From Gekko japonicus (taxonomy: Eukaryota), in contig NW_015175367.1 in the NCBI RefSeq assembly GCF_001447785.1, positions 901,369 to 965,368 of the forward strand: a stretch of DNA of 64,000 nt, read 5' to 3'. Position numbers and translations under genes: made by a program. Positions 1,919 through 27,400 of this stretch are shown here, in pieces. Below the pieces are notes generated by a model, which saw nothing but the letters and a program-made list of their open reading frames with translations, had not been told where the DNA came from and ran no database searches. How positions within the stretch are numbered: position 1 is the first letter of the stretch; each line of letters begins with the position of its first letter.

Positions 1919-3456
1919 TATATGTCTCCTTAAAAGTAATTTGCCTGTCTTTGAAAATGACAATTTGATCAGCATTCTCAAAGTGTTTCTGTTGAGAAAA
2001 TATAAAATGGAGCACTCTGTTTAGGTTGTACAGAAGACAGAAATCCAACAGTACTCCAGGCAGATGATTACAGACCATAATGATGATGATTAATCACCAT
2101 TATTTATGTAGCGCTTTTCACATGAAAAAGAATTTAGATTGTCTTTATTCTGTTTGTGTTCACAGTTCCTCTGACTGATGCAGTTGTGCCAACATGCTCC
2201 TCGTTTTTAGAGGAAGTTGCTTCCAGTTTACCTTATTGATTTTAATAGGCTTAAACTGAAGTCACTCTGCATAGGATTGCCCTGTGTTATTTCCAGATAG
2301 TTAAAGAGACCATCTGCAACAAAGCAGAAAGTGAACTAGGCACTTCTGTCATTTCTAAGACATGTGGCATTCCAGTCTCATTGTTCAGTCCTGGCTATAC
2401 AACTGCCACAAAACCCAACTGGTTTATGAATCAAGGCCAGAACTTTTAAATTCTCAAGGCAAAGATCAGCTATATTCTTCAACAATGAAAAAAAAATTCA
2501 GTTCCAACAAGGCATACAATTAGATATATAAGAAAATAAAAGCAACATAAAATGCCATTTCACTCACACAATGCCAAGGTTAGATTATGAATACTACAAC
2601 ATGGAAAAATAAATACATTACTTAATTACAGTATCATTGATCTGCATCCCATGAAGGACAGGCTAGAGTCTCCAACCTCTCTCATCATCCATTATAAATA
2701 ACAATCTGTTCCAGCCTCTTTTCACAGAGAATCACACCTGGAAAATTTATGATGGGATTCACACCAAGCCTCTCTCTGCCCAACTCCCCACTTTCCCCCT
2801 CTCCTCCTGTAATTTTCTTTATAAGTATGTGGAAAATGGTTTCCTCTTGACAGCATCTGAAGAAGTAACCTCTGACACAAAAAAGATTATGCTGAAATAA
2901 ACACTGTTAGTCATAAAGGTGGCACTGGAATCAACATACTTTCCACAAGCAGAATCTATTCCATCTACATTACAAGGCTGAATCTTTCCGCGTACACTTT
3001 CTGTCAGTAGAAACTTAACTTTTGCTAGAAAACTCTTTTTCCAATTACAAATTGTTGTCAAAATGTCTGATGTAAGAGGAGGCAGACTGGCAAACAAGTT
3101 TATACAATCAGTCCTGTCTCCAAAAATATATGCATACCTTGGGATGGGAAGACAAGTGCTAAACTGAGTGTTAAATAAATAGTTTGAACCCACAGTAATG
3201 TCATAATTGAACTGGTGCTATTCATGCTTTCCCAGTACAGGATCGATGTTCCAATGAATAGACACCTATTACATATGCCCAGCATATCAGTTCTATATCA
3301 AATAATAGCCATGGGAAGCACAATTATTAAAACAAAGAGATATTACCTTATTTTACCCATGAGTGCATTAATCCCCCCAAAAGCCCCCCCCTATCAGGAC
3401 ACAATAAAACCTAAAATACAGAAGCCTATAAAACTGAAGAAGAAAATATCCTTCTA

Positions 3457-4958
3457 CTAGCCTGATACCCGTGCTTCGCTACGGTATTTAAGTTCCATAA
3501 ATCCAGTTATAATACTGATGATGTAAAGTTTGAAATGTAACATTTGTTGTAGGAATACTAATGGAGAAGACTGTAGTGTAAAAAATGAAGTGAGACATAT
3601 GTACTTTTTCTCTCTCTACTGAAGGACCTCTCTGTAGACCGCTGGGGCGGGCTCACTCATGGCTTTAAGCACCCTGCAACCGCTGCTGCACCTGACAGAT
3701 AACCACCTGTTAGGTGTAGGAGGTGGGGTAGTGTGTTGGAAGCCATCAGAGAGGTTGGGCCAGCAACATCGCTAAGGTGACCCTGCTGGGGCGGTGTCCT
3801 TGATGAATTAAAGTACCCTGGTCCTGCTCCTACACCTAACAGACACCCGCCTGTCTGGTGTTGGGGGGATTATGTTTAAAGGCATCAGGGAGACTGGGCC
3901 AGCAGCAGGGCTAAGGCAATCTTGCTGAGCAAACCTTCCAGCGGCTATAAGCATCACACCTCCTCTCCTACATCTTACAGGCAGCTGCCTGTCCAGTGTA
4001 GGAGGGGGGAGGAGTATTAGAAGTCACTGTGGAGGCAGGGCTGACAGGATCACTAAGGCATTACTGCTGGGGTGGGCTCCCTCGTGGCCTTAAGCACCCT
4101 GCAACCGCTGCTGCACCTGACAACCACCTGTTAGGTGTAGGAGGTGGGGGGAGTATGTTGGAAGCCATCAGAGAGGTTGGGCCAGCAACATCGCTAAGGT
4201 GACCCTGCTGGGGCGGTGTCCTTGATGAATTAAAGTACCCTGGTCCTGCTCCTACACCTGACAGATACCCGCCTGTCTGGTGTTGGGGGGGATTATGTTT
4301 AAAGGCATCAGGGAGGCTGGGCCAGCAGCAGGGCTAAGGCAGTCTTGCTGAGCAAACCTCCCCAGTGGCTCTAAGCATCTTATCTCCTCTCCTACACCTG
4401 ACAGGCCTGTCCAGTGTAGGAGGGGGAGGAGTATTAGAAGCCACTGTGGAGGTAGGGCTGGCAGGATCACTAAGGTGTTACTGCTAGCGCAGGCTCCCTC
4501 ATGTCTTTAAGCACCCTGCAACTGCTGCTGTGCCTGACAGACAACTGCCTGTCAGGTGTAGGAGGGGGGGAAGCATGTTTGAAGCCATAGGGAGGCTGGG
4601 CCAGCAGTTTTACTTCACCTCACAGGCGGCCGGCCACTCCTGATTTCCCCAACTGTCATTAGCTCTCTGTAGTCCCCTGTAACTGTTTTTTTTTTTTAAC
4701 CTCAGAACACTGAGCTCTGCAGCTGACCAGAGAGTGGGAGGTACAAGGAGGCAGCAACCTAGCAACTGCATAGGAATCAATGGGGGGAGCACATTTTACC
4801 CCATTTGACCCCCTTAGGGGTCGAATTTCTAAAAATCCTTCTTTGTGAGCACCTACGTCACAGTAGGAGCTTTCTCCCCGAGTTTGGTGTTTCCAGGTCC
4901 AGTGGTTTGGCCTGGGCATTGATTTTATGGTGAGGGGACTTACTTTTATATATACAGA
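3457..4958 (-). mobile_element. Non-autonomous Helitron (1.5 kb) containing a tandem hairpin array
   Basis: The minus strand starts A|TCTGTATATATAAAAG at 4958 and ends ACCGTAGCGAAGCACGGGT (hairpin)-ATCAGG-CTAG|T at 3457. These are the canonical 5' TC, 3' hairpin plus CTAG, A|T insertion site and no TSD. Confidence 0.85.
3640..4607. repeat. Tandem array of ~7 x ~140 bp monomers with trimeric (~420 bp) higher-order repeat
   Basis: The anchor CTAAGG recurs at 3772, 3911, 4053, 4194, 4334 and 4470. Monomers three apart are near-identical, e.g. 3771-3910 versus 4193-4333. Confidence 0.9.
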
Positions 4959-5980
4959 TGAATAAGGTCTTTGTCAGTGATTGTCAGCCATGCAAAGAAA
5001 TTTTGGTTGATTAATTGTATATATAAATTGGTTAACTAATTAATTACATAAGCACAATTGCACGTTATATATATAAAATCTGCAATTGTGCTTAGGTAAA
5101 AAACAATAGATTTTGATCTTAAAAATATTTCTTTGGTTTGTAGCATGTGTATATATCATAACAGACACTATACTAGAAGGGGCATTCCCTATGTGAGATG
5201 TCACTGGCAATGTGCAGTTTTTGTAAGTGCTAATATTGAACATAATTAACTTTAAAAAAATAGATTGCCTTATCAGGAATTCCTTTGGGGATGCTAAAAA
5301 CCTTTCATGAGCTTTTTAATTGATTAATTTCCCAAAAGCTTAGGCCCCAGTCAGTGCATTGTCATTTCTTTTTTGTCCTCTGTTTTATGGCAGTGTTGCT
5401 CTGTGAAAAGGCCCAGACTTGTGTGGATGAGATGCTTGAAGTAAGCACAAAGGAAGTTAAACTCATGGAAAGTCCATGGGTACAAACTCTTGACAGTATT
5501 CTGTGAGTTCCTAGACATTACAACGCTGGATAGAAAAAATAAAATGTCAAGGTGTCCAATTATAAGTCATCTTTTGACATCAAGACACCTGGGTTTCCTA
5601 TAAATACCAATGAAATTATATTTGGTTTAAGTAACTCAGAACAAATATGGATTCAGCAGGTATACTGGGTATCAAGAAATAAAGCAAAGCATGCCAGCAA
5701 ACAATATATATTGGATTACTCATATTGACATTCTTTGGTTCCTCTCTTCAGACAATTTATTTAACCAGACATATTGTTGTAATATTTACTGTCTGCTTTA
5801 TTGATTTAGAAAGTGGCCTCTTCTTGGAATCTCAACAAGGATTTCCATCTGTCTCATTGTAAAGAGCTACAAATACCATCTGCTACATTATGCTCCTTCC
5901 TGAACTGTTTTTCTTGGAAGATGGTGTACACTACAGGCTAAGGCTTTATTTCTTTTTTACTACTGTTAAACTCCAAGTTG

Positions 5981-9420: not shown

Positions 9421-12400
9421 TGAAAGGGGTGTTGATAGGGCGAAGTCCTGTCCTGGAGTCTGGGGAGAGCTTACACGCAGCATCTGCCTGCCTCTCTCAT
9501 CGTCTCGCATTCATTTTTATCCCACTTTTCCTCCAAAGGATTCGGGGTGGTGTTGGTGGTTTTTTCCCCTTCCTCATATGAGATGCCCAGCCTCAGCGTT
9601 TGACATGATGGTCAACTGAGCATGTCCAGAATGCGCCTTTCTTCCATTCCTTGTTTATTAGCGTGAAATGTCAGTGTCTTAATTGGAGGGACAGGCCTTT
9701 GTTTTTGTTCAGCACCCAGGAATATGTGACTCAATGGTAAAGGAAACTCTGATCATTTGCAGAATGATCTGTGTCATATTTGTAATTGTATCTTTGCCAT
9801 ACTGTACTAAAATTCAAAGTACCTTAGATGAGTTTCCTCTTGAAACATTTCTTTTTAAATTGATTCCCCCCCCCCCCAGACTCTGAGTAATCAAAATACT
9901 AGTTTGGGTTGGGGTACAGAGTATTGTATGCAGAGCTGCGGTGGCTCAAGTGGTTAAGACGCTGAACTGCAGACTGTGGAAGGTCAGTAGTTCAGCAGTT
10001 CGAGACCTGAGTTGCCGCATGACGGAGTGAGCTCCTGTCTCTAGTTCTAGCTCCTGCCAACCTAACAGTTCGAAGGCAAGAAATTGCAAGTAGATAAATA
10101 GGTACCACTTTGGTGGGAAGGTAACAGCGTTCCATGCACCTTGGTGTTTAGTCATGCTGGTCACATGACCACAGAAACGTCTTCGGACAGCGCTGGCTCT
10201 TCAGCTTGGAAACGGAGATGAGCACCGCAACCCTAGAGTCGGATTCGACTGGCTTTTGGGCATGGGAACCTTTACAGAGTATTATAATGATGTATGTGCG
10301 CTGTGAAAACCTGGAACGTGGTAAGTATTGTTTAGTATGCTGTGATTCCTGAGTTTCTGAAATAACTGATGTCTTAATGCCCCATATCCTTCATTTGTAG
10401 TTTGGTGGAAATACCTTTAAGTTCAGAACTCCACACGCTCAACTTGCACAGCAACCAGATCTCAAGGATTGAAAGACTTGACCACATGTTGAATTTACAA
10501 CACCTAGATTTATCATCTAATTGCATACATCGAATTGAAGGACTGAGTTCTTTAGCTAACTTGCGGACTTTAAACTTGTCTTGTAACTTGATAACAAAAG
10601 TTGAAGGTTAGTTTGTGGTGGGATTGTGACTGTCTTTGTTGTGAATGTTGCAATGAATGGCTCGCAAACATCTAAACACTCTGTTCAAGAAAGCTCATCA
10701 AACTTGTGCTTTTCAATTTTATTTTATGTTTTATTATTCACATTACTAAGGAAAGCTACATAAAGCTTGATGTTGTGGTCATCAGATTTTGAACATCAGT
10801 GATAATTTTCTGTGCTTCTTCTAAAACCTTGATTTTTTTGGCAGTATTATTTCTATGTCCATTCCCCACTGTCTGTGTAGTGGGGTGTGCATAAAGTGCC
10901 ATCAAATCGCAGCTGACTTGTGGTGACCCCAGCAAGGGGCTTTCAAGGCAAGTGAGAAGCAGAGGTGGTTTGCCATTACCTTCTTCTGCAGAGTCTCCCT
11001 TAGTGGTCTGCAGTGTTCCCTCTAAGCTGAGTTAGTGTGAGCTAGCTCACAGTTTTTTAGCCTCTGGCTCACAGATTTTTGTCTTAGCTCAGGAAGGATG
11101 GCTCCAGAGCCAACTAATTTATGCAGTGGCCAAATTGCTTGCTCACAACTTTAATGCCAGCAGCTCACAAAGTAGAATTTCTGCTCACAAGACTCCACAG
11201 CTTAGAGGGAACATTGGTGGTCTGCCTTCCAAGTAGCAACCCTGCTTAACTTCCAAGATCTGATGATATTGGGCTATACCATACTGATCCCTTCCCATCT
11301 ATGTAGTTACTTCCTGCAGACTTAACTACACATCTGCCTCAGTGAAGCTTATGAGTGCTTTTCATAATAATTTTTCTAAACTTTATGACCCAGTACTCTG
11401 TTATTTTGACTGCAGTAGACTAACTGCTACCACCCTGGAACAGGTAGCTAATAAGTCTTTACTTTTTCTTCTTTCTTTTGTTCAGGACTGGAAAAGCTAT
11501 TCAGCTTAACTAGATTGAATTTATCTTATAACCACATACATGATCTTACAGGTAAGGTAAATTAGTATAAACGTCTAACATGCTTGATGAAGAAACAGAG
11601 TGAGCTGGGAACTTAAATCCTGCTTGCTACCTACTGCAAAGAAACTATTTAGTTGTGTTTATACTTTTCATGAGAATAATGATGGTATGACTCTCTAAAG
11701 CTGCAATCCTAAACACATCCTAGGGAGGAAGTCCCAGTTAACTCAGTAGGATTTACTTAGGAGTATACATGTTCAGGGTTGTGTAAGAGCTATATTTATG
11801 CAATCCAGGTCAAAACTGATTCATGGTCAGTTAAAATAAATGCATTCAGTCTCATCTGAGATCTTTGAGTCTGAATAAACAGTGTCTCTAAAGCTAATAA
11901 TTTTACCTGCAGTGGAAAACCCAAAGCACCCCTGTGGTGGTAAAAAAAGAAAGAAACAACATAACTAACACTTGCTGCCATTTAATAGTGTATCAAACTT
12001 TGCTGCTTCTGCCTTTTTCAGCCTAATCCATCGATTGGTACTGCTGTGTAGTTACACTCAGTGCTCTGCAAATAAAACACCTATGGAGTTTTTTACACGA
12101 AAGACTTCATCCTACATTAAATCTAGTTGAAGAAGGATCCGTTTTTGAATTATGATGTTTTTCCTTGAAAGTGTTTAACAATTATTGTCTAATTATTTTT
12201 CCCAGGGCTGTTATCTCTTCGTGGAACCAATTACAAAATTAGTCATCTTGAGCTTCACGGCAACTGTATAAATAATATTAACCACTTTCTCCAGTGCTTG
12301 ACTGGATTACAGTACCTGACCCACCTTACTTTAGAGAAGAATGGTAAAAGTAATCCACTGTGTGCCAGATCAGGTAAGAACTGTGTTTACAAGCTGCTTA

Positions 12401-15400
12401 GCACACTTCTATTTCCCTGAAGTTATGCTAGATTGTCATTAGCTATTCAGGAGAAAGTAGTGTTTTTAAAGTTATGTTATATTGAAATGAACTTTCAGTG
12501 ATCTATGGTATCTTTCTGTAGATTATTTAAGAATAAACACATTATCTGTTTTTAAGATTACAGAGAGATCCTCCTCCAGGCTTTACCCCAGCTGACTACT
12601 CTAGATGGCAAGAATATATTTGGTGAACCAGTAAACACTGTGGAAGCAAATCCATCAGATCTGATGAGCTTTGAAGGCCTTTTGGATTGTTTGGCTTCAT
12701 CCCACTCCCCCACAGATGAAGAGGAGGTATTGTGACCAGTGTTCCCTCTAAGCTGAGTTAGTGTGAGCTAGCTCACACTAACTCAGCTTAGAGGGAACTT
12801 TGATTGTGACTATTACTTGTTATGTCTAAAACATAAAAGTAGGATGTATGCTTCCGTATGCTATTTATGTTTTTTTTGTCCTTTTTAAATAGACGTGTGC
12901 TCATTTACCTGTGATAACGCCCCGTATTGACCAGGTGTTAGCTCATTTTCGCCAGCGTACAAGTATGCCATCTTGGCCCACAACGAGTGTTTCCACTGAG
13001 CTGGTATCCTCTTCAGAGACAGAAACGATGAAACTTGCCAATGACTTATACAATGACACAAGGATAAAAAAATTAGAGGATCAAATATCGCATCTATTGG
13101 AAAAGGTAATAGGTTTAAGGAGAGGTGTGCCCTCTAATCAAACTTGGTAAAAAAAATATATGTATTTACAAGTCTGATGCACTTGGCCAAATTAAACATA
13201 ACCAACATTTGATTTATTAAATTTTTACCCCGCCCTCCTGGCCAGGGCCGGCTCAGGGCGGCTTATAAAAGCAGCGTAAAATTACAGTAAAATTGCAATA
13301 AGGTACATTAACAACAATATTAATAATAAACAATTCTGACTATTCATATTAAAACATATTAAAATGATAGTATCGGTATCAATAATTCACAGTGGTTGTT
13401 ATTACACGAGCTCTTTATTTTCAGTCGGCTCTTGTTCTTTTAGATCAACTTAGACGGCTATCTCAGGCTATGAGTTGAATCCCAGGAGAACAGGGCTCTC
13501 CCACTTTAAGCCATCAGCTGTTAATAATTAGTGGTTAGTGGTGGCGGCGGCTCCAAAGGTCTGGTGGAAGAGCTCCATTTTACAGGCCCTGCGGAACTGT
13601 AAAAGGTCCCACAAGCCCCTGGTCTCTTCTCATTCCACCAGAGTGGAGCTGCCACCGAAAAAGCCCTGGCCCTGGTTATTGATAGCCTGACCTCCTAGAG
13701 TGTGCCCCGATATGCGGGTGGTATTTGCAGACTCTTGAGAATTCTTTGGCAGACAAGTTGATTGGGAGCAGGGGAGCCCTGATCTTAGAATTCTAGTTGT
13801 CTGACCAAAAAGAACCCAAAAAAACCCCACCAAAAACACATGCAAATAGATCTGGGAATGTTATTTTTGTTCCAGCGAACTGACCGAGAGGGAAAGGCAA
13901 TGATGTTGTTAGTCCTACATAGTCCATGTCGTTCATCTTGCAATCTCTGGATGATGTTTCTGCTAGTATGCTGCTTTAATTTGTACCAGTCTACAATTAA
14001 TTTAAACAGGAGAGGACAGCTCAGCTTACTGTACCATATTTGTCATGATTCATGTGGTTAGCAAGCACATATCAAAACTGAAAGACATTGTCTATTTTTA
14101 TTTAAGAGATTTCAAAGCTATCTTTCCACCTAACAAGGTTCTCAGTGGCTAACAAGAAAAAAATGCAGAAGTAGCATATAAAACACACAACATTAAACTG
14201 TAGTGGTAGAATCCACAACATTTCAGAGCCTTGACAACAGCAATACTGTACCCAATATATAAACCAGACTGGGTGGTCTATAGGGATGATGCTAATCTCT
14301 CTTTATGGGGAATTCCACAGATTGGGGTTGACAACCAAAAAGGCCCTCCCTTGGGTTCTGGTCAACCTTCTCCTAAAGGGGTTGATGATATGGTCACAGT
14401 GATCCATGCTCTGATTACACCTGGATTAAGCTTGCTGTAATGGGCTCTGTGTGGGCTGCCTTTGAAAACTGTCTGGAAATTTCAGCTAGTCCAAAATGTG
14501 GTAGCCAGGCTACTTTCAGGGGATGGATACAGGGATCGTATCACTCCTGCACTAAAAGATCTGCACTGACTGCCCGTTTGTGTTGGGCACAACTGCACTG
14601 CCTGCCTGTTTGTGTTGGGCACAATTCAAACTGCTGGTTCTTTCTGTCAAGGTCCCAAAGAAGTTCTTGAAGTACTGCCTCCTCCTGTATTGTCCAGTCC
14701 ACCAGCTAAGATCATCCTGGCTGTGTCCCCACCCACAGATGTGAGGCAGGTGGTGACCAAAGATGGACCATTTTCAGTGGTGGCACCTTGCCTGTGGGAT
14801 GCCCCCCTTCTTGTGGTTCCCCTGATGCTCATGCTACTCTCTTTCAAGTGCCAGGCCAAAAATGTTTCTTTTTATCCTGGCTTTTAGTTAATGGGTTGAT
14901 TTTAATGCCACTTTATAGCTAGCTTTTTAGTCTGAAAACAGTTTAAAATCCATTTTAGCCTGCTTAGTATGCTCTGGCAGATTTGTTAATGCTGAGTTTC
15001 AGTTAACTTTTCTGGTGTGTTACATTTTATTTTGTAAGCTACCTTGGACAGGTTCCCTGGAGAGGCAGCATAGAAATGCACTAAATAAAAACAAATAAAT
15101 AATAGTTGTAGGAATGCACACTGTATGGCTCTTGAAGCCCAGGTATATTAGCACAGGAAGAGGAAGTCTTTCAAATAGTCTGGACCTAAGCTAATTAGGC
15201 CTTTAGAGGTCAGAACCGGCACCTTGAATTAAATAAATAGATTGGGAACCAGTGTACCCATACTGACTGAGCCAGTAATGCTGCAATCATTATGGCATGT
15301 TTCTGTAAGAACTCTTGCAGCTGTATTTTTGAGCCAACTGCAGTTTCCCCCAACTGTCTTCAAAGGTCAGCCTCATATAGAACATGCTATAGTAGGCTAA

Positions 15401-18400
15401 TCCTGGGCCCCGGTCACACGGAGCATTTGCCACGTTAAAGAGACGGATGATAGGCGGATTTTCCGGGCACGGTCACACCGCAACATCTGGGAGGCGTAGT
15501 GCTCCCGTGGCTAACCCGTGACTTCCCGCCGAAGATGCGGCTTAAAAAACTAGTACCTGCGAGGTACTAGTTTCCGAACAACGTGGGGCAAGGGTGGGCA
15601 TCTGATCGTGTCCCGTCCTAGTCCCGTCGCAAACCGGTTACTTCCCCCCCCCCCAGTCTGCACAGGATGCGCACAGATGATCATGCGCATGCGCACCTGG
15701 TGAAAAAAAATATTTCCAATTGCCACGGAAGCAACGCCTAGCGATTGTTGGTGTGATTGCACCGCGCTGCTTCTTTGCCGCGCTGCAGATTGGTCATGTG
15801 ATTGGCACCTTCCCCCTAACCACGGGACCTCCACGGGATGTCTGATCGGGCAGCCGCGTGTTACTTTGCTCCGGGGCAAACAGCCACTTCCCCCCCGCAT
15901 TTTCCGGCCGGTGTGACCGGGGCCCTGGATGTTAACAGCTGGGTTTGGCTTGCTCCATTTGTTGTTTGTGTGTGATTTGAAAGCTTATCATGACCTTACC
16001 ATAAAAGTATAAATCTACCGCAGTTTTTCCCACTTGGTTGCCTCTGTACTTAACTCTGAAAGAGTTACTGTTTGAATAATCTCATCAGTGACTTTTGTTC
16101 TGATAGTGCTGCCTAGAGTCAACCTGAAACAGCATAATCTCTCTTAATAGAAATAACTAGTCTTTAGGTTGCAGTGCAAATGACATACTTGTAAGTCTAT
16201 TTCAAAAGCACTGAAGCTCACAAAAGGTTGAGAAGCATAAGCTTGAGAACCAGAAGTACTGCATTTTTTCTGTTGCTTGGCTTTAAAAGAGATTTTAGAG
16301 CTACTACAGTTGCACAGATGATTCAGTTCGAAATGGCTTCCAATATAAAGTTACCACTTTTACTCTATAGACCTTTATGTCTAAAACTGACGGATCTGAC
16401 ACTCAATTAGGACAAGAAGTACTGTGGATTCTGAATCCGTTCTCTTATTTTTAGGTGATATACTCTTCTGCAAAAAGTAGCAGTGATGTGAATGTTCTTA
16501 AGGCAAAAAAAGACACAGATCTCACTTCAGGGAGTGATGGTGAAAAAGAAAACAGCAGAAAGGTGGCAAAAAGAAGCAAAATCCCTAATTATCGCAAAGC
16601 AACTTTATCTACCAAACACCGTTTTCAGAGGGGCAAAGTCTCGGACAGGTACCTTCTGCTACAACCCCCCCCCCCAACATGGGGAGGGGAGACTTGGGTG
16701 TGTCTTGATAAAATGAAGCTAAATGTTCTTCTGTGAGAAGTTTGAAACTTATTACATCTTGTCCCACAATACTAATAGTAACATTGCTAACTTGGCAATC
16801 TTGCACACACGGTACGGGGGGGATGAGTAATTGTGGGGATGGGGATAATTGGAAGATCCCTCTTGCCTTATAGTGCTAGATGCCTGAGCTCTGGGGCTAG
16901 GGGAGTACTGTCGTGCCTAGCTGTAAACCTGCAATCCAGGGCAACTGCCCTGTAATGCTGACTGTGAAGGGTTTGTGGGTCAAAGTTGCTTGTGGTGCCC
17001 CATATCAGGAAGGTACAATGCTTGAAGAGGGGATTCTTCTCTTTCCTTGGTTTTGTTGTACAAGGGTCTGCGCACACACCCCAGTCTCCGTTTGTTCCCA
17101 TTCATATAGTTAATTCTCTTTGTGCAAAGAATATCTGTATTCCAGTGTTATCATAAACCTCTGTGTCATTTTAGTGGAGAAGAGCGGGTTTCTATAAAAT
17201 CAAAAAAATTAGGTGCTCAAGTCAAAGAGGAAGAAGATTCCAGTTTACTTTCTGATGTACCAAGTTTGGAAGTAGTGGGGAAATCACCCAAGAAACTGAT
17301 GGCTGGGCAGAAGAGCCCAGTGAAAAAACTAAAAAGTTTAGATTCAAGTATTCCAGAGGAGTCAACTTACAGGGTACTTCTGGTTTCTTGTTTTGAGAGA
17401 ATGACTACTTAGTTTTCAGATCTGCTTTCCTTTTATTTATAAGCTTCATTGACCAAAGGTCTTAAGCCAGACATACAGACAAACAACTACAAAACACATT
17501 ACATATCACTGCAAGATAATTTAGACCAAAATATTTTAGAAATAGAAAGCAAATAATCATACTCATAAGCAAAATTAATAGGCAGCAATTTATAAAATTC
17601 CATAAAATGCCATGGTATTATAAAATTTAGCTTTAAAATTATTATACGTAAAGCTACATAGATCATTTCAAAGGCGTTTTAAAAATAACACTATTGATAG
17701 ATATTTTGCCACCAAGCGAGTTGTTTCAGGGTTCTCATCTGCTAACAATAAAGTTATCACCCAAGATTCTACTGGTAGGTGATATCTATACAAAATAGGA
17801 GTAATCCAACAGGCTCTGGGGCCAATCCACTGGCGGCAAAATAGCATGTTTTCAGATCTGCAGTAAATCTAGCATTAGTGAACAAAAGAAGTTTAGAACA
17901 ATTTCGGAGTGCAAATGTCTTTACAGTGTTAGGGGTTGATATCTTTGTAATCCAATAGAAATATTAAGGTTTCTAAGAGCTTCATAGATTAAGATGCAGA
18001 AAGAGAATTTAGGAATGATGCTATAGTTCTGTACCCTTTTTTGAGAGCCAGCGTAGTGTTGAGAGCCAATGTGGTGTGGTGTACTCTAATCTGGAGAGCT
18101 GGGTTTGATTCCCCCCTCCTCCACATGAAGCCAGATGGGTAACCTTGGGGTAGTCACAGTTCTCTCAGAACTCTATCAGCCCGACCTACCTCACAAGGTG
18201 CCTGTTATGGGAAAGGAAGGAAATTTGTAAGCTGCTTTGAGACTCCTTCAGGTAGAGAGAAGCAGGGTATAAAAACCTACTCTTCTTCTTTGTCTACCAC
18301 CACACCTGCTTGTTTAAGGTCCTGATTTGTCTTTTACTTTTAGCTATTAACTAGTTCTGGAGCATTTTTCCTTTTTTTACGGGTAACACAACCAGACCTG

Positions 18401-21400
18401 TGATTCTGGAAAACCAACGTATAAAACACTTATCATACACCTCATCCTATAGCATCACTTGAAGCCTCACCTTTTTATGACTTTTACAATTTGGGTTCCA
18501 TTTTCACCAAGATCATATACTTATAGCAAATGGGAAGTTTGCATGATTAAATGATGCAAAACACTTAATCATTGTGACTGTTCTGTATTCTTAGTGGTAG
18601 AATGTGATAGTTTTCCTTCTTATTCAGGCACTGATTCAGGAACTGGATCAAGAGCGTGAGAGGAGGTGGAAAGCTGAACAAGCTGAAAAGAAACTGAGAG
18701 AAGATATCAAAGAGCTGCAGAGCCATGCAAAAGAAGGAAAGGATATTCAAAGCATGGCTGTGTACACTACGGACAGGTTAGGAACCAGCATGTTAAAAAG
18801 ACTGTAAAAAAGTTATTTAGTTTCACCAGCTATAAAATAGAACACCTTGTAGCCAGTATTCCCTCTAAGCTGAGTTAGTGTGAGCTGGCTCACAGTTTTT
18901 TAGCCTCCAGCTCACAGATTTTTGTTTTAGCTCAGGAAGGATGGCTCCAGAGCAAACTAATTTATGCAGTAGCCACATTGCTCACTCACAACTTTAATGC
19001 CAGTAGCTCACAAAGTAGAATTTTTGCTCACAAGACTCCACAGCTTAGAGGGAGCATTGCTTGTAGTTGTAACATATAATCAGTTCCAGTAGGTAAATCA
19101 GTAAATCCTCAAAATAGGGATGTAGCTCTTCTGATGGGCAGTTTTGGATAAATCTGTGTGCACCTGTTGGAGTGTGTGTGTGTACCACATACTTTGAATC
19201 TGACAACAGATAATGGCAGAGAGGATGTTTAATGGAAAACCTGATAACTTTCGAGTAAGTATGCTGTATAATATCTGATCTTTTTTTCTCACATAACATT
19301 AAATGTATATTGGAAATAAGTACAAAAGCTAATAACTTTTTGAAATTCCACAAAAACTTAAATGCCTAGCTTTTAATGACTGTAAAAGCAATATTTACTA
19401 TATTGTTTTAATAGTGTCCATTGTAAAACTCAGAACAAGAAGATTCTTTATTTCACCCTCTTTTTATAAAGTTTTGTCCATCCAGATCAGTGGGACTTGG
19501 GGAGTAATGCTAAGCACATGAAACTGCCTTATACTGAATCAGACCCTTGGTCCATCAAAGTCAATATTGTCTAATCAGACTGGCAGCAGCTTTCCTGGGT
19601 CTCAGGAAGAGGTCTTCCACATCACCTACTGCCAGGTCCTTTTAACTGGAAATGATGGGGATTAAACCTGGGACCTTCTGCATTCCAAGCAGATGCAATA
19701 CCACTGAGCCACAGCAGCTCTATTTGGAAATAATTCCTAAGTTTTTCAGTGGGACCTCCTCCCAGGAAAGTGTCTTTAGGATTGCAACCATAGCCCTTAG
19801 ACTCACTTTATGTACACTTAAGGCACTTTACCGTTTATGAGATGAATGGTACACTTTTACTATTAATGATGGCCAGAAACTTGTTTTCTTCTTTAAAGAA
19901 AAAGAAAACAGGCTTGCTGAATTTTGTGACCACTATCAAATGTTTTATTGTCTGTGCTTGTGTGAAATCATGGAATAAGCATGGTCATAATATTGGATAA
20001 TTTAAAAGTAGCTCAGAACTAAATAATTTCTCTACAATCTGATTACAGCAGTGCAGAAGGTGAACAGATGCCAGAGTTATGGCAGTATGGGGTTTCTGTA
20101 CATAAAAGGCTGTGTTTGCTTCAAAACACAGATTAATGATCTGCCAAATTAAATTATTTACAGCCCCATCTCCTGAACTTTGAACATTTTCCTGTTGCCT
20201 TCTAACTAGCTCAAGTTTTAGTCCTACTACACTGTTGTGAATAAAATTAATTACTAGCAATGGGCAGATGACAAATGCTGTCACTTTTTAACATTGGATT
20301 TTCTGTCTTCCCCTGAGTGTCCAAAATTACTAAATATTTGTTTTTGGAATACACAACTGTACCTTTCCCAAAAACGATCTCTGCTTAGGCTGTTGCTCTA
20401 AATAATTTAAAACAAACTAAAAGAAAGATTGTGATGCACTAGCTTTGTGTACTACTTTATCAGGCTAAAAGAGCTGGTTTTGAGAGAGAGAAATGCCAAG
20501 ACAAAACTACAGGTTGACATTCAGCAACTGAAAGAGGAAATGGAAAGCCTCCGTAAGGAGCTAAGTCAGTCTAAACAGAAAGAGGCGGATCAACAAAAGG
20601 CACGGCAGACATTAGAAGAAACCTTGTCCAAAATGGAGACACAAAGGGTGCAACAGCAAGCTTCAGAGGTATAGGCTATAATTCTAAGCACTGAAGAGTT
20701 GAGGCTATTGGTGCTCTGGTATAAGTGTCTATCATTGAAATGGCATATTGGTAGATACGGCTCGTGACACAGTTGTGATAAGAGATGCATTTGACCAAAT
20801 TAGTTCCTCCTTTCCAGACAGCCCTAATATCCCTTCCATATTTACTAGTTTTCTAGAGTGCAATTTGGGACAGAACCCGTTAGTATGTGAATCGCCTGTA
20901 AATAAAGGTGAATCACCTTTGTATCTTCTGAGTGGTTGATATTAGCATAGACTAGTAGTACACGTGTGGGCATGGTGGTGCCACATTTGCAGCTATATCC
21001 TAGTACATCCCCATTTACTGTGAAATTCCTCCACATGACTGCAAGAACATGTGGCTGCTTCAGCATAGTCCCTGGACTATGAACCAGCCTTAACACTGAA
21101 CAGCTGCTGAGTGGTACTGGTTAAATGTTTCTAAGCCAACCAATGAAAGAAGTGTTTTGCCAAGCAGGAGCGGAGAAATGGAATACCTTACACAAAGAAG
21201 AAACAGCATTATGTATGGCGTTGATACTTTATTTTTATGCAGGAATTACAGTTTCGTACTGTATTTAACTGGCTTTTCTGAAATCAGAGAGTAGTAAAAT
21301 GAACATAACTATATGTATCCCCTGATGTTTGGTAAAAACTAAAAAAGCAGCTTGTAGTGCTCTCCAGAATGATAACCTTTTTGGTTTTTCCGTGGCATTA

Positions 21401-24400
21401 GGCCTAATAAATCACGAAAGAAGCAATTACAGCAGAATTTGTTTTTTGTTTGTTTGTTTTTTGGCCCCCCGAAGGGGAATTTTTTATTTGCATTTCTATA
21501 AAACTACAACAAAAATTGGGGAGGGAGAGTCTACGATCGATAGGAGAAAGTAAAAAGAACCTAACTAAAAACCCAAGAATGGAGGTTTTACAATGCTTAA
21601 AACATAGTTGTTACTCTTATACAGTTACTTTCAAACATGAAGAGTGCCCGCCAATCATCGCTTCTGCTGACAAAACCAGCTTATCTGACTGAACAGAGAG
21701 TAATTCCAAAGCTATAACACACATAATCACAGCCCTTAAGAAAAAATTAGCATCTCCACGCTGTACTCCCCCCCCCCCCAAGGCAAGATCTTTAAAACCA
21801 ATGTTCCCTCAGTAAGAACATTACAACACGTTTTTCTTCTTCAGTATTCCTTATCTTCACTTCCTTAAACGTCTTAGATCAAAAGAGTCTTTCCTTTTGT
21901 TGCAGTAACAACACTCTCATTGGAGATTCCAACCTTTCTCTTAGCAAGCAGATCTTATAAAATTGGGGTAGCGAGCCCTTTACTCCAGAAAACCGCTTTT
22001 CGATCAGCTTGCCAATCCAGCCACAAAGAACTAAACTTTAGAGTCTCCTTACCATTCATACGTCTCTATGATCAACGTACTGTCCCTTTAAAAGTGTAGC
22101 TGCTTTTAGTACAGATCCAGGTTGCTTCTCACTTTAGCCACCAGAGGGCCCACGATTCACTTTAAAGACAGAGTCTATGGTTAGGTCACGTGACCTAATT
22201 TTCCACTGTCCTCCTTCCTGAAGAAAGCATTGATCCTGCCTCCCTCTTCGCCTCTCATCACCATCTTTTTGGGATGTTTACATCAGCCGAGAGAGAATGC
22301 CAAAGTCTCTAAGGTCTGTTTAAACGCTCAGCTTTCTTTTAGAAAAACTTTCCGCTACAGTCCATCGCCACAATTTGATCAGTTTCTCCATCCTTGCTTT
22401 CGCATTTGCTTAAAACGTCGGGAGATAGGGCGTTCCCCTCCCCCCCTCCGTTTATACGCTTATAGTAGAGGGACTTCACTTCTAGGTTTTAGTGTCTCAT
22501 TTCAATGGCAACTCACTCATCAATCCTTGAATCGATCCCCCTGGTCCTAAGACGGCCCCTGGGATCACGCCAGGCAGAGAAAATCGCTAAACCTCCAAAT
22601 GCTTGTCCCGGTGGTAACTTCTAATCCAGTACTGGGAATCAGGGCAGGACCTTCAGGGCAGAGAGTAGCCCCCCTGTACCGGCTGCCGGCCGGAGGTAGG
22701 GCTCTCCAAAGCCCCCTGGCTAGAAGCCCATTGTCTATGGGCTTCATGGGGGAGTGTGCACAATCACGCTCCCTCCTAATCCCCGATTCATGGCACACGT
22801 CTCTCGGAGGAACCAAGAGACACCGCCATCGTTTAAAGCGCCAAAACCGGAACTCTACAGCAGAATTTGTTGTTATTGTTCCAGAGGTGGCAAGTCTGTT
22901 GCAGGCAATATATAGATGGGAGTCTTGTGGCGATTGAAAGACTAATAGAATTTTATTAGTGTATTAGTGGTATGACCATGTTTCTGTTGTTTTGACTTAA
23001 AATGTGGCACAGATGAAACAAATTCAAGCTGCAGAACTTAAAGCTTCAGCAGCTGAGAGAGAAGTTCAGTTACTTCGAGTATCTCTTCGGCAACAAAAAG
23101 AGAAGATGGAACAAGTCCACGAAGTTCTTACATTAAGAGAGCAGGAGCACAGGTATGTGCTTTATCTAGTTTGTTAGTTTAAAATATTTATATATCTAGC
23201 TTTCTCCCAGGCATCCTAGGACTCAAGGTGGATCATAAATTGCACATTTGAAACTATGGTTAGATAAAAATAGGCAAGTTTATCTTCTTCCCAAACCAAA
23301 TTCCATTGCTGAAAGATTAAACTTTTTGAGCATGACAGAGGAAAGCTAGTATTTCTGTTTGAAGATGTACCGGTGGACTACAGAAGCAGCTCTTCTATCT
23401 GTACTGTAGGAGCCATTTCGCATGAACCAACAAGTCAACATAACCCCTGTTCTCTGCAAGCTAATCCACTGTCATTTGCAGACACTCTTTTTTTTCTTTT
23501 AAGGTAGAGTTCCTTGTTGAATAATGCTACAGAAGAAGGTTGCAGTCTTCATTTTTCTTAGTGTTTAATTTCTTGTTTGTCTTGTAATCTTAGAAAGGAA
23601 CTGGAAGCCAGAGTTAGTTTAAATGGCTCAGAATTCCAAGCTGCTCTGGCAAAAGAAGTGGCTAAAGAGCAACAGAGACATGAACACCATATTAAAGAAC
23701 TAGAGGGTAAAATTAATCTCTTACGCAAGAATTATAAAGATCTAGAAGATGAATTTCGGATTGCGTTAACGATTGAAGCCAAAAGGTTTGCAGAGGTAAG
23801 CAATGGGAGGGGGAAGAAATACTTCGGAATTGCGAGTGCTGTTAAAAGCAGGTTTTTTTATTCCTTTCTTTTTTTGTAGGAATAAAACTGCAGTGATAAT
23901 TTTTCCAGCTGTTGAGGTTAAAACACGTACTTCTATTGAATTGAGATTAAGTGTCTCACATCCATAGGTTAGGTTCTGTGGGTCTGTTCTACAACGGGTG
24001 ATTATCTCCTCTGGTGTAAGGAGCCTTCCCTGACACACGCTGTGCAGCAGGCAACCCAATATTCCTAAAAAACAAAATTAATACTTAATTTTCTACGCAG
24101 TGTGTTCTCTAATACTTATTTTGCTCCTGTTTACTAGGCTTGCTACACTACATTTTATTCCAGAAATTAAGGTACATGAAGATAACCTTAATAAACAGTA
24201 TTTTTTCCTAAAATAGGTTAAAGAGGCCTTTGATAATGTTGCTGCTGAGTTGGCCGAACACAAGCATGCTCTTGTTCAGTCTCGACAAAAAGAAAAGCAG
24301 TCGGCCACTCTGATCCAAGAGCTGACATCCATAGTGAAAGAACAAAAAATTAAGATCACGGAGCTGGTCAAATCGAAACAAGAAACAACGTTGAATTGGA

Positions 24401-27400
24401 AAGTATGAATCTGCAGGGTTTTTAAAGTAATTGCATGTTTTCTGTATTACGTTCTGTCTTACATTAACATCTACTGAGAAGATAAGTAATAATATTAGGA
24501 AATAAATGTTAACCTGTAATAATCACAGTCTTATGCTCCACGTGACTACAAAATGTGCCGCCACCAGGCTAGCTTGAAGAGAGTGTGTGTGTGTGTTTCC
24601 AGATTCCTCTTTTGCTACCTCTTCTCCCCTTCTTTATGGATCACTTCTGATAGTCTTAAGTTCTTCTTTTTTCCTTGGCTCATTGCTTGACCTTTCTCAA
24701 CTGCTCTATTCATATGATATGAACAACTCAGCCTATAGCAGCAAGAAACCCTTCTCCCTGCCTGTAATTGACTTCTTTGGTCAGTTACTAACAAAGGCTT
24801 TGCTATTACCAACATACATTCCCTTAGTAAGTTATAGATGTTATGGAGTAACATCTTAAAGAGAGACTCATTAAAGTTTTCTTTTTTCTTTGTAGAGTCG
24901 AATCCAAGCACTTGAATATATGGTGGAGGAAGATAAACAAAAGACTATTCAACTTGAGCTTCTTAAACAAGAAAAATCCAAACTTATTTCACAGATAACA
25001 GCCCAGGAATCTGTAATTGATGGATTAAAAACTGAAAGAAAAATATGGGGACAAGAGCTGGCGCAACAGGGTAAATTAGTAGTAGAGTTCATTGCAAATG
25101 GCTAAAGGCAGTTATGATCTTAGACTGGAAAGTAATACATAAAATAAGCAGTGTGCCTTGTTTTTAGTTCTGATAGGATATAAATGAAGAATGAACTTGA
25201 AATATGTTAGTTACATTTGTAAGAATGCACAGACTGGTTTGTAATGAGTGAGACAATGGTAGCAAACCTTGTACCCTTTATGTCAGTGGATGCCAACTTA
25301 GGTTTCCTTTCAGTTTGTCCATACAGGGTAGGAGCTGTTGCATAAAAACCTGTTTTGTCAGGGTTGGTCCATCTCTTAGGTGCATCTAGGCACCAACCAA
25401 TCTGTCAGTGTTCAGCCCATGGTGTTGGGCTGTGCTGCATCAAGCGGCAGCCCCAGGCGATACACCTGGCCTTAGTGGGTCTGAGTCTGTTCCTTTCCTC
25501 CCTCTGCTGAGGGGCTGGGACCAAGGGTGGGCCCTTTTTCCAGGGCTATATTGCTGGAGGTAGGAAGCAAAGTAATTCGCCTAGGCGGCTGAGAGTCCTC
25601 GGGCTGACCCTGTGTTCTGTTGATGTCTGAGTGCATCCAAATGCTCATTCATTACCACTGATTTTTAGAAGCACTAACTATAGTTCCAAAACACTAACTA
25701 TACTAGATGTCTTACTGTATGCTTTTTCCTTTTTTTAAAAAAACCCACAACAGTTGATCAGTTAATAATCCTCAAGTGAGAGCCAGTTTGGTGTAGTGGT
25801 TAGGAGCGCGGACTCTAATCTGGGAGAACCAGGTTTGATTCCCCACTTCTTCATATGCAACTGCTGGTGTGACCTTGGGTCAGTTACAAGTTCTTTCAGA
25901 GCTGTTCTTTCATGAGCAGTTCTCAAAAGAGCTCTCTCAGCCCCACCTACCCCACAGGGTGTCTGTTGTGGGGAGGGGAAGGGAAAGGAGATTGTAAGCT
26001 GCTTTGAGACTCCTTCGGGTAGTAAAGGGCGGGGTATAAATCCAATCTCTTCTCTTCTTCAAATTGAAGAAAATTGAAATTGAAAGAAAATTGAAGAAAG
26101 AAAATTATTAATACAGCGCCTGTGTGGAGAGATGTTGTAGAAGGCCTGTCACTTTCAGGGAGCGCTACTCTCCTCCACAGAAAGTGAGGAGGAGAGTTGC
26201 AAGCTAGGTTAGGTGCCTGTTGGATCTGTGGAAAAGAGCTCCAGTTAAAGCTTTATGTTGGGATTCAAAGCAACCAAAGGGGACTAAGCAGTTATACTGT
26301 TTTGAGTATCTTGTTGTGAGATGAAAATAGAATTTATGAAAATAAATGTCCAGTGGCAAACAAGCTTATTCAAGAAAATAGTCTTTCTCTCTGCAAGTTT
26401 GAATCTCCAGTTCTGAAAGTTTTACCATGGTCCCCATGGTTTGAGGTACTGCAGATAGTGAAGTAAGATCGTGGAAAGAAAAATGATTATTTCTAGCCTT
26501 TGTGTTACTTGGTAATACCCAGAAGAGAATTCTGCATTTGCATTATTCTAATATGATGTACTTGATACATTCCCCAGATGCAGAAGATGAGAACTGATTC
26601 CAAGCAGGTTTCAAATACTTTGCATTTGACTTTAAATATGGGATAAAACAAACATGTCTAGAACCTAATAAAAGCTGAAATGGTCAGAATAAAGTGTTTC
26701 TCTGCTGGCAGCCATCCTATGAAAATGAATGCCCTTCTCCCAGGAAAGACCCCCCCCCCGAAGTTGCAGTCCAAAGCAAAAGGTAACAAACAAAATCACA
26801 GGGTAAGGGAAATCAAAAGATTTAGAGCAGAGTACTGTGGAGGATAAGTGTGTTTGATAAGAGAGTGGAGGATCAGATCTTTGCTGCCTTCTATGAGCAG
26901 TGCCCTGTGCTCTTAAAAAAATACTCCTGAGGGCAGAGGAACCCTCCAGCCGTGTAAGACCTGCAACAAGAAGAAGCAGTTGGCAAAAATTGCCCCCCTT
27001 CCACTTTTGTACTACCCAAACAAAAGGTTGTACAAGAACAGGATCCTAATGTCTGCTGATTCTTCCTTGTTCCCCACCATGCTGAGCCTAAGGATCCCTC
27101 AACTGTCAGGATTTTTGGATGGTTATGGGGGTATCTATGAGAAAGGTGACAAAGATCATTTCCTTACTTCCCAAAAATGTTTTTAGAATAAACACTTGGA
27201 AGTCTGATAAAAGTGCCACTAGCTGCCTGAAATAGCCATTTACATAGTAGCTGTGAAGTGCAGTTGCTTGCGAATAGAGAAGCAAATATCATTCTTGATT
27301 AAGCAAGCTGTGGAGGCCTGCAAGAGTTTTCAGCATCAGGACATGCAACTGTTGTATGTCCTATCTTCTTCTTAAACCTGTTTGCAGAGAAGATGTCAGA

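What the first reader, a model, noticed from the sequence alone, without database searches (positions are those of the whole stretch)
3640..4607. Helitron-borne array of ~7 fold-back hairpins with a trimeric higher-order repeat
Seen: each ~140 bp monomer is an imperfect palindrome over almost its whole length. Outer arms are GCTGG...CCAGC, then TGGCTTT...GGAAGCCA, with an inner stem CCTACACCTGACAG-loop-CTGTCAGGTGTAGG. Three diverged monomer types repeat as an ABC unit of ~420 bp, and the array sits fully inside Helitron termini. Inference: a rolling-circle element is dispersing a structured satellite. A transcript from either strand would form tandem pre-miRNA/endo-siRNA-like stems, and the monomer length is close to a nucleosome core. 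It may be a mobile small-RNA cassette or a satellite seed. I know of no description of this element.
Basis: partly seen in the sequence, partly recalled or inferred. Interest (0 to 1): 0.8.

Follow-up and report, generated by a model that had tools for sequence, protein, structure and literature searches.

The report
Lizard Helitron carrying a hairpin-monomer tandem array
A 1.5-kb non-coding rolling-circle transposon (Helitron), present in thousands of copies in this lizard and its relatives, carries seven ~140-bp repeats that each fold back on themselves; this is a real and tidy example of a known way for transposons to spread satellite-like DNA, and nothing yet shows that it makes small RNAs.

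Summary
Positions 3641-4607 contain seven head-to-tail ~140-bp monomers in the order A B C A B C A. Same-type monomers are 90-97% identical and different types 69-80%, giving a ~422-bp higher-order unit. Each monomer is a long, imperfect palindrome.

The array lies inside a canonical non-autonomous Helitron on the minus strand (3457-4958). It has a 5' TC, a 3' hairpin followed by CTAG, and sits between a host A and T. Contigs from two related species show the exact empty site.

Summed contig depth rises about 10^3-10^4-fold exactly at the element's borders in three species, array included. Array length varies between copies. So the Helitron does disperse this array.

RNA-seq reads are sparse, come from both strands and mostly from other copies. 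No small-RNA data could be examined.

As RNA the hairpins are stable only on the window + strand, which is antisense to the Helitron. As single-stranded DNA on the transposed strand they fold about as well as shuffled sequence. Compensatory changes occur in clusters, as replication template switching would produce.

Most likely this is a passenger tandem array, as already described for oyster Helitrons. The scan had earlier flagged another array-bearing Helitron in this genome. Interest is moderate to low.

The parts
3457..4958 (-). Non-autonomous canonical Helitron, 1,502 bp, inserted between host A (3456) and T (4959)
   Evidence: Termini read on the minus strand. Summed contig depth jumps from 56-69, 17.6 and 9.5 in the flanks to 10^4-10^6 exactly within these borders in X1, X3 and X6. 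Empty site: X3 record 9 joins 3455 directly to 4958, and X6 record 16 does the same with 44 unaligned bases between. No ORF over 86 aa.
4934..4958 (-). Helitron 5' terminus, starting with TC and preceded by host A
   Evidence: single match in the window; depth falls off in bin 4944-5024.
3457..3484 (-). Helitron 3' terminus: 16-nt GC-rich hairpin, 8-nt spacer, CTAG, followed by host T
   Evidence: Hundreds of contigs in each of three species break off at 3455/3456 into unlike A/T-rich flanks that end in A (table 7).
3641..4607 (.). Tandem array of seven ~140-bp quasi-palindromic monomers, order A B C A B C A, higher-order unit ~422 bp. GC 57% against 34-36% in the flanks, G>C skew +0.12, CpG observed/expected 0.16
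3641..3784 (+). Monomer A1 (hairpin 3641-3766 plus ~18-nt linker)
   Evidence: RNA fold -69.9 kcal/mol, z -6.45.
3785..3923 (+). Monomer B1
   Evidence: RNA fold z -3.30.
3924..4065 (+). Monomer C1
   Evidence: RNA fold z -3.68.
4066..4206 (+). Monomer A2
   Evidence: RNA fold z -2.43; 96% identical to A1.
4207..4346 (+). Monomer B2
   Evidence: RNA fold z -4.55; 97% identical to B1.
4347..4482 (+). Monomer C2, the only monomer that folds well on both strands
   Evidence: RNA z -6.10 on + and -4.28 on -; 90% identical to C1.
4483..4607 (+). Monomer A3, last of the array, without the linker
   Evidence: RNA fold z -5.08; 84-85% identical to A1/A2.

Best explanation
The array is the internal tandem-repeat region of an abundant non-autonomous canonical Helitron in a lizard genome, probably an anole or close kin. 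The element encodes nothing and is moved in trans by an autonomous Helitron's Rep/helicase, so every rolling-circle transposition copies the array to a new A|T site (inferred from the established Helitron mechanism).

The array itself grows and shrinks by ordinary tandem-repeat processes such as slippage and unequal exchange, in steps that include one ABC trimer. The fold-back shape of each monomer was most likely inherited from a palindromic founder monomer. It has probably been partly maintained by DNA-level template switching between the arms (quasi-palindrome correction) rather than by selection for an RNA.

Transcripts that contain it appear to be passive read-through from host genes. This particular copy is a recent, species-specific and now decaying insertion.

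Shown: the anatomy, the Helitron membership, the copy-number jump, the empty sites and the array-length variants. Inferred: trans-mobilisation, the mode of array expansion and neutrality.
For: Helitron hallmarks and a precise empty site.

Summed contig depth is 10^3-10^4 times the flank depth, exactly within 3457-4958 and across the array, in three species. In total 24,766, 15,508 and 9,556 contig pieces were laid.

Joints that skip 413 or 421 bp (one ABC unit), that skip 214 or 636 bp, or that go back 342 or 772 bp show that array length and order vary between copies (table 5).

Array depth is not above that of the termini, so the array lives mainly inside the element.

There is no ORF over 86 aa.

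RNA reads are equal on both strands. Only 23 of 2,575 are 99% or more alike, 45% run on into unlike sequence, and the flanks have zero depth.

ssDNA folds of the transposed (window -) strand are no better than shuffles for 6 of 7 monomers.

Sister monomers differ by pair-breaking as often as pair-keeping changes, with no double compensation.

Compensatory pairs sit in blocks at columns 10-11, 17-19 and 35-39. This is the pattern template switching produces (PMC8794818, PMC5453318).

The same architecture is known in oyster Helitrons.
Against: 87% of cells pair across three monomer types that have diverged 20-30%. Nine pairs show double changes against 1-5 in the slid controls, and 16 compensated cells against 7.8 +/- 2.2 in shuffles. 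This is more than simple decay of one old palindrome predicts.

RNA folding is clearly better on one strand, with G:T facing pairs outnumbering A:C 42 to 22. That could reflect selection on a + strand RNA.

The origin of the founder monomer was not found: it has no similarity to the rest of the element. Other genomic copies could not be retrieved as sequences, so family-level covariation is untested.
Confidence: 0.65

Rival explanations
1. Mobile small-RNA cassette. Transcripts reading the window + strand (antisense to the Helitron) fold into tandem ~50-bp stems that Dicer or Drosha process into siRNA- or miRNA-like RNAs. These would silence the Helitron family or regulate host genes.
For: The + strand RNA hairpins are far more stable than shuffles (z to -6.5), and markedly more so than on the - strand. 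Pairing is kept across the diverged monomer types with some double changes. The family is transcribed at a low level.
Against: No small-RNA data were available. No Rfam miRNA family matches (best E 0.2, at 23 bits against a 79-bit threshold). Reads are sparse, from both strands and from other copies. There is no excess of A>G over other transitions in RNA relative to DNA that would suggest editing of dsRNA (table 1). The stems are 34% mismatched at the DNA level, and sister monomers lose 10-12 kcal/mol without compensation. The strand asymmetry may simply follow from the G>C skew of the array.
Confidence: 0.12
2. Cis-acting transposition aid. The hairpins form in the single-stranded Helitron intermediate and help its stability, circularisation, second-strand priming or Rep/helicase pausing. 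That would explain why array-bearing copies amplified.
For: The array-bearing subfamily is very abundant. Helitron termination is known to depend on a 3' hairpin (PMC4778049, abstract listed).
Against: On the strand that the established model peels off (Helitron sense, window -), the ssDNA folds have z from +1.8 to -1.6 for six of seven monomers. The 3' part of the element is 2-5 times deeper than the array, and a loose end at 3640 shows related elements without this array, so the array is dispensable for mobility. The monomers do not resemble the 3' terminal hairpin.
Confidence: 0.08
3. Captured foldback or MITE. Each monomer is a former miniature inverted-repeat or foldback element that was captured by the Helitron and then tandemly amplified, so the palindromy is a relic of terminal inverted repeats.
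For: The palindrome spans nearly the whole monomer and a ~18-20-nt non-palindromic linker separates the units. The monomers are unrelated to the rest of the Helitron. This genome is rich in MITEs. Helitrons in this genome carry captured MITE and SINE cargo according to earlier, unchecked scan notes.
Against: There is no solo copy of the monomer elsewhere in the 64-kb window. Array depth is not above that of the Helitron ends, so there is no sign of an independent dispersed monomer family. No target-site duplications are visible around the monomers.
Confidence: 0.15

Closest known systems
Central tandem repeats of non-autonomous Helitrons/Helentrons in the Pacific oyster (Cg170/CgiSat arrays; PMC8268682, PMC5139131, PMC7492417)
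   Same: Short arrays (about six monomers) of roughly nucleosome-sized monomers sit in the centre of non-autonomous rolling-circle elements. They are scattered genome-wide by transposition, and monomer number varies between copies.
   Different: Here the host is a vertebrate. The element has canonical Helitron ends (TC...CTAG at an A|T site), whereas the oyster literature describes its carriers as Helitrons/Helentrons. The monomers are long quasi-palindromes arranged as a trimeric higher-order unit, and no free-standing arrays are evident.
DINE-1 / DINE-TR1 Helentron-derived elements of Drosophila with internal tandem repeats
   Same: A very abundant non-autonomous rolling-circle element whose central tandem repeats expand and can seed satellite DNA.
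   Different: DINE-1 elements are Helentron derivatives with subterminal inverted repeats. Their repeats are not full-length hairpins. This element meets the canonical Helitron criteria instead.
Non-autonomous Helitron families of Anolis carolinensis (Helitron-1N1_AC to Helitron-2N5_AC; Novick et al., PMC3014272)
   Same: Lizard host, 0.5-2 kb non-coding Helitrons, TA target, high copy number and recent activity. A Tc1/mariner MITE end published for the anole occurs exactly in this window.
   Different: That paper mentions no tandem or hairpin arrays. It describes all the families as internal deletions of autonomous elements with about 2% divergence. Most copies here are only 85-95% like this one. 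Whether this family has a Repbase or Dfam entry could not be checked.
Transposon-derived hairpin small-RNA genes (MITE-derived miRNAs; Helitron-derived miRNAs reported in vespertilionid bats; from my own knowledge)
   Same: A DNA transposon supplies ready-made inverted repeats that fold into stems once transcribed.
   Different: Here there is no evidence of processing and no matching RNA family. The stems, about 50 bp with many mismatches, are longer and looser than typical pre-miRNAs.

Membership tests
Canonical Helitron (non-autonomous) | 5' end TC and 3' end CTRR | tested here: met
   On the minus strand the element starts with TC at 4958 and ends with CTAG at 3457.
Canonical Helitron (non-autonomous) | GC-rich hairpin about 10 nt upstream of the 3' end | tested here: met
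   A 16-nt stem-loop lies 8 nt before the CTAG.
Canonical Helitron (non-autonomous) | Insertion between host A and T without target-site duplication | tested here: met
   Host A at 3456 and T at 4959. The X3 contig (record 9) joins 3455 to 4958 with nothing between, removing exactly 1,502 bp. The X6 contig (record 16) also lacks the element.
Canonical Helitron (non-autonomous) | No terminal inverted repeats | tested here: met
   No inverted pair links the two termini in the repeat scan of 3300-5100.
Canonical Helitron (non-autonomous) | Multicopy family sharing the same termini; no Rep/helicase ORF | tested here: met
   Hundreds of contigs per species end at 3455/3456 with unrelated A/T-rich flanks, and depth is 10^3-10^4 times the flank depth. 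The longest ORF is 86 aa.
Helentron / HINE (DINE-1-like) | Subterminal inverted repeats and Helentron-type termini and targets | tested here: not met
   No subterminal inverted repeats were found. The ends and target site are of the canonical Helitron type.
Satellite DNA with higher-order repeat | Head-to-tail monomers in which equivalent monomers of successive units are much more alike than neighbouring monomers | tested here: met
   90-97% identity within a type against 69-80% between types; period about 422 bp.
Satellite DNA with higher-order repeat | Long free-standing arrays (satellite blocks) | tested here: inconclusive
   Array depth does not exceed that of the Helitron ends in three species, so no large blocks are indicated. 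Summed contig depth is a poor measure, however, and assemblies collapse satellites.
miRNA / hairpin-siRNA precursor cluster | Thermodynamically stable hairpins | tested here: met
   + strand RNA z from -2.4 to -6.5. The - strand is weak.
miRNA / hairpin-siRNA precursor cluster | Discrete small RNAs from the arms | not testable with these tools
   No small-RNA run was offered, and the single reads call went to DNA contigs and one poly-A-type RNA-seq run.
miRNA / hairpin-siRNA precursor cluster | Match to a described RNA family | tested here: not met
   Nothing reached the Rfam gathering thresholds. The best relaxed hit scored 23 bits against a 79-bit threshold.
miRNA / hairpin-siRNA precursor cluster | Covariation that supports a selected structure | tested here: inconclusive
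   Nine pairs show double changes and the slid controls score lower. There are only about four independent lineages, the changes come in blocks, and sister monomers show none.

The most novel reading that the evidence does not exclude
The Helitron family spreads a ready-made cluster of hairpin RNA genes. Wherever a copy lands antisense in a transcribed region, the array would be cut into small RNAs, giving this lizard lineage thousands of dispersed sources of siRNA- or miRNA-like molecules. These would act on the Helitron itself or on host transcripts that contain copies. The one-strand bias in RNA stability and the retained pairing between diverged monomer types would then be marks of selection.
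Probability: 0.1. Interest if true: 0.75.

Novelty: new member of a known kind. Interest (0 to 1): 0.3.

Why it matters
This is a clean vertebrate example of a rolling-circle transposon carrying and scattering a satellite-like array, with a precise empty site in sister species and visible array-length variation. It could therefore serve as a model for how tandem repeats are seeded across a genome. The fold-back monomers add thousands of dispersed quasi-palindromes. These are potential sites of replication stalling, of double-stranded RNA inside introns, and of cryptic splice sites. If small RNAs were shown to come from them, interest would rise sharply. Without that, the finding fits what is already known from oysters and flies.

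Tried and rejected
1. A first palindromy test based on percent identity with free end gaps was uninformative, because the shuffles scored as high as the real sequence. It was replaced by a global score test.

2. A pattern scan for the inner stem in the metagenome collection gave two hits. Both are GC-rich bacterial contigs with an unrelated terminator- or REP-like palindrome, so they are chance matches. Scans of viral contigs for the stem and for both Helitron termini gave nothing.

3. Rfam at gathering and at relaxed thresholds gave no credible family.

4. I looked for the origin of the monomer in the rest of the Helitron. No alignment scored above the shuffles. There are no other copies of the monomer or the termini in the window.

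5. Full-text search for the core sequence words returned no paper.

6. The scan's own notes, searched by sequence and by words, held nothing further on this array.

7. G:T versus A:C asymmetry as evidence of RNA selection: 42 against 22 cells (p = 0.017), but the monomers are not independent and the array has a G>C skew, so I do not rely on it.

8. The organism names are coded, and the species could not be named. Only an anole-type MITE end supports 'anole or kin'.

Full report
WHAT IS THERE

Positions 3641-4607 hold seven head-to-tail repeats of 123-144 bp. With every monomer started at its GCTGG/GCTGA/GCTAG motif, the starts are 3641, 3785, 3924, 4066, 4207, 4347 and 4483. Pairwise identities are 96% for A1/A2, 97% for B1/B2 and 90% for C1/C2, against 69-80% between types. 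The last unit, A3, is 84-85% like A1/A2.

Each monomer is a hairpin of about 120 nt followed by a ~18-20-nt linker that contains CTAAGG.

HOW PALINDROMIC ARE THE MONOMERS

I aligned each hairpin to its own reverse complement with scoring that treats all mismatches alike. The scores lie 2.6-6.4 standard deviations above dinucleotide shuffles.

The palindromes are loose. Of 413 facing positions, 273 are Watson-Crick, 42 G:T, 22 A:C and 76 transversion mismatches.

- As RNA, the window + strand folds into one long stem per monomer, at -54 to -70 kcal/mol and z from -2.4 to -6.5.
- On the - strand only C2 is convincing (z -4.3); the others range from +0.4 to -2.3.
- With DNA parameters, the + strand reaches z of about -2 to -4 (A2 is +0.9). 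The - strand is indistinguishable from shuffles, again except for C2.
- In the folded 1-kb array, several monomers form their own hairpins and others pair with neighbouring monomers.

The strand difference goes with the array's composition: GC 57%, G>C skew +0.12 and CpG observed/expected 0.16.

THE CARRIER

Read on the minus strand, the element begins after a host A with TC at 4958 and ends at 3457 with a 16-nt GC-rich stem-loop, an 8-nt spacer and CTAG, followed by a host T. Both termini are unique in the window. There are no terminal inverted repeats and no ORF above 86 aa.

These are the defining features of a canonical, non-autonomous Helitron of 1,502 bp. The array occupies its middle, flanked by 184 bp of 3' sequence and 351 bp of 5' sequence. 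The monomers have no detectable similarity to those flanks.

EVIDENCE FROM PUBLIC RUNS (runs chosen)

I laid contigs from three DNA runs with three different organism labels, plus raw reads from one RNA-seq run, on 3000-5400.

(a) Depth. Summed contig depth is 56-69, 17.6 and 9.5 in the flanks. It jumps to 10^4-10^6 exactly between the bins containing 3457 and 4958, and stays there across the array. The tool warns that this is not a copy number. Even so, a 10^3-10^4-fold step with 9,556-24,766 contig pieces laid means a very abundant family in all three species.

(b) Insertion sites. In each species, hundreds of contigs break off at 3455/3456 into unrelated A/T-rich sequence ending in A. These are independent insertion sites that share this exact 3' terminus.

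(c) Empty site. A 923-nt contig from organism B (record 9) aligns to 3041-3455 and then continues without a gap at 4958-5346. This is the empty site, lacking exactly 1,502 bp. A 3,788-nt contig from organism C (record 16) also lacks the element. A contig from organism A (record 8) runs from inside the Helitron 5' end (4931) into the right flank, so the site is occupied there. The flanks of B and C differ from the window by about 6-8%. The insertion is therefore younger than those species splits, while the family itself is shared.

(d) Array variants. Joints inside the array include skips of 413 and 421 bp (one ABC unit), skips of 214 and 636-638 bp, and returns of 334-342 and 772 bp, each seen in several contigs and species. 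Copies differ in monomer number and order.

(e) No excess over the array. Depth over the array is no higher than over the termini, and the 3' part is 2-5 times deeper. A well-supported loose end at 3640 leads into a different sequence. Relatives without this array therefore exist, and there is no sign of large free satellite blocks.

(f) RNA. 2,575 reads were laid, from about 3% of the run. They split equally between the two mate orientations. Only 23 are 99% or more alike, 45% run on into unlike sequence, and the flanks have zero depth. This is family-level background transcription from other copies, not a dedicated transcript at this locus. Transition types in RNA show no A>G excess over the DNA runs.

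IS THE HAIRPIN UNDER SELECTION

On the seven-monomer alignment, the consensus structure has 48 pairs and 87% of cells are paired. Nine pairs show changes on both sides, against 1-5 when the partners are slid. There are 16 compensated cells against 7.8 +/- 2.2 in column shuffles. That exceeds what decay of a single old palindrome predicts.

The weight of this evidence is limited:
- There are only about four independent lineages (A, B, C, A3).
- The compensated pairs fall in three blocks: columns 10-11, 17-19 and 35-39. Most separate type C from types A and B.
- Between the young sister monomers there are 20 differences in paired columns and 17 in unpaired ones. Pair-breaking is as common as pair-keeping, and there is no double compensation.
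- Sister monomers differ by 6-12 kcal/mol.

Replication template switching between the arms of a quasi-palindrome produces exactly such block-wise 'compensatory' changes, and it can create and maintain hairpins without selection (PMC8794818, PMC5453318).

The excess of G:T over A:C facing pairs (42 to 22, p = 0.017 if cells are treated as independent, which they are not) goes with the G>C skew, and I do not count it as evidence for an RNA.

MOST LIKELY MECHANISM

This is a non-autonomous Helitron, mobilised in trans, that carries a short tandem array as cargo. Each transposition copies the array to a new A|T site.

The array changes length by slippage or unequal exchange, partly in trimer steps. 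The palindromic shape comes from the founder monomer and is partly refreshed by template switching. Transcripts are passive. I put this at 0.65.

Rivals:
- A small-RNA cassette (0.12). It is favoured by the strong one-strand RNA stability and retained pairing, but is otherwise unsupported.
- A cis-acting role in the single-stranded transposition intermediate (0.08). The strand that the established model displaces does not fold better than chance, and array-less relatives are abundant.
- A captured MITE or foldback as the origin of the monomer (0.15). This is compatible with the main reading.

COMPARISON WITH WHAT IS KNOWN

Short arrays of about six monomers of 160-180 bp in the centre of non-autonomous Helitrons/Helentrons, scattered genome-wide and varying in monomer number, are documented in the Pacific oyster (PMC8268682, PMC5139131). 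From my own knowledge the same holds for Drosophila DINE-1/DINE-TR1.

The published catalogue of anole DNA transposons lists eight Helitron families and mentions no tandem or hairpin arrays (PMC3014272). One of its Tc1/mariner MITE ends occurs exactly at 52736 with an inverted partner at 52851-52870, which suggests an anole or a close relative. No searchable paper contains the core sequence words. I could not consult Repbase or Dfam, so the family may already have a consensus entry.

The scan had already flagged another array-bearing Helitron elsewhere in this genome (note s1-830839). Another reader marked the same Helitron borders (s1-828291), and I confirm those borders.

VERDICT

This is a new member of a known kind: the first example I can point to in a lizard with full-length hairpin monomers and a trimeric higher-order unit. 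Functional claims remain open. Interest is 0.3.

No stretch of N was touched.

Noticed in passing
window 4234-4236 (monomer B2): 44 RNA-seq reads with 95% agreement carry an unrelated 30-nt sequence that ends exactly before 4236, which follows an AG (TTAAAG|TACCCTGG). A B-type monomer in some copy seems to serve as a cryptic splice acceptor, so the array may be exonised in a host transcript.
   Followed up: no
window 3640: 67 RNA reads, and many contigs, leave the element at the array's left border for a different sequence. The 3' part (3486-3566) is also 2-5 times deeper than the array. Related Helitron subfamilies apparently share this 3' end but carry other cargo.
   Followed up: partly
window 3640, 3781, 4203: At these three sites nearly all other copies in all three species have T where this copy has C. 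3781 and 4203 are the same linker position in A1 and A2, so the two trimer units of this copy share a private state. That points to a sub-lineage or to conversion between units.
   Followed up: no
window 3628-3644 and 4663-4679: A 17-nt direct repeat (88% identity) brackets the array and the first ~55 nt to its right. It may be a microhomology footprint of how the array-bearing segment entered the Helitron, or it may be chance.
   Followed up: no
window 52736-52870: A ~135-bp MITE whose ends match the terminal inverted repeat published for anole TcMar-N3_AC/N5_AC (exact on one side, 2 mismatches on the other). It is a clue that the genome is an anole or close kin.
   Followed up: partly
window 5044-5099: A loop-less 56-bp palindrome (two 28-nt arms, 86% complementary) lies 85 bp to the right of the Helitron. 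It is unique in the window and also lies within the contigs of the two other species, so it is older than the Helitron insertion.
   Followed up: partly
window 54716-54787 (+): tRNA-Ala (AGC), called by both Rfam (49 bits) and ARAGORN. It could be a gene or the tRNA-like head of a SINE.
   Followed up: no
L001 12866-12905 and L002 2487-2527: Two bacterial metagenome contigs from one sample carry a perfect palindrome with the same 14-nt stem as the lizard monomer's inner stem. It is an intergenic REP- or terminator-like hairpin, and the match is a coincidence.
   Followed up: yes
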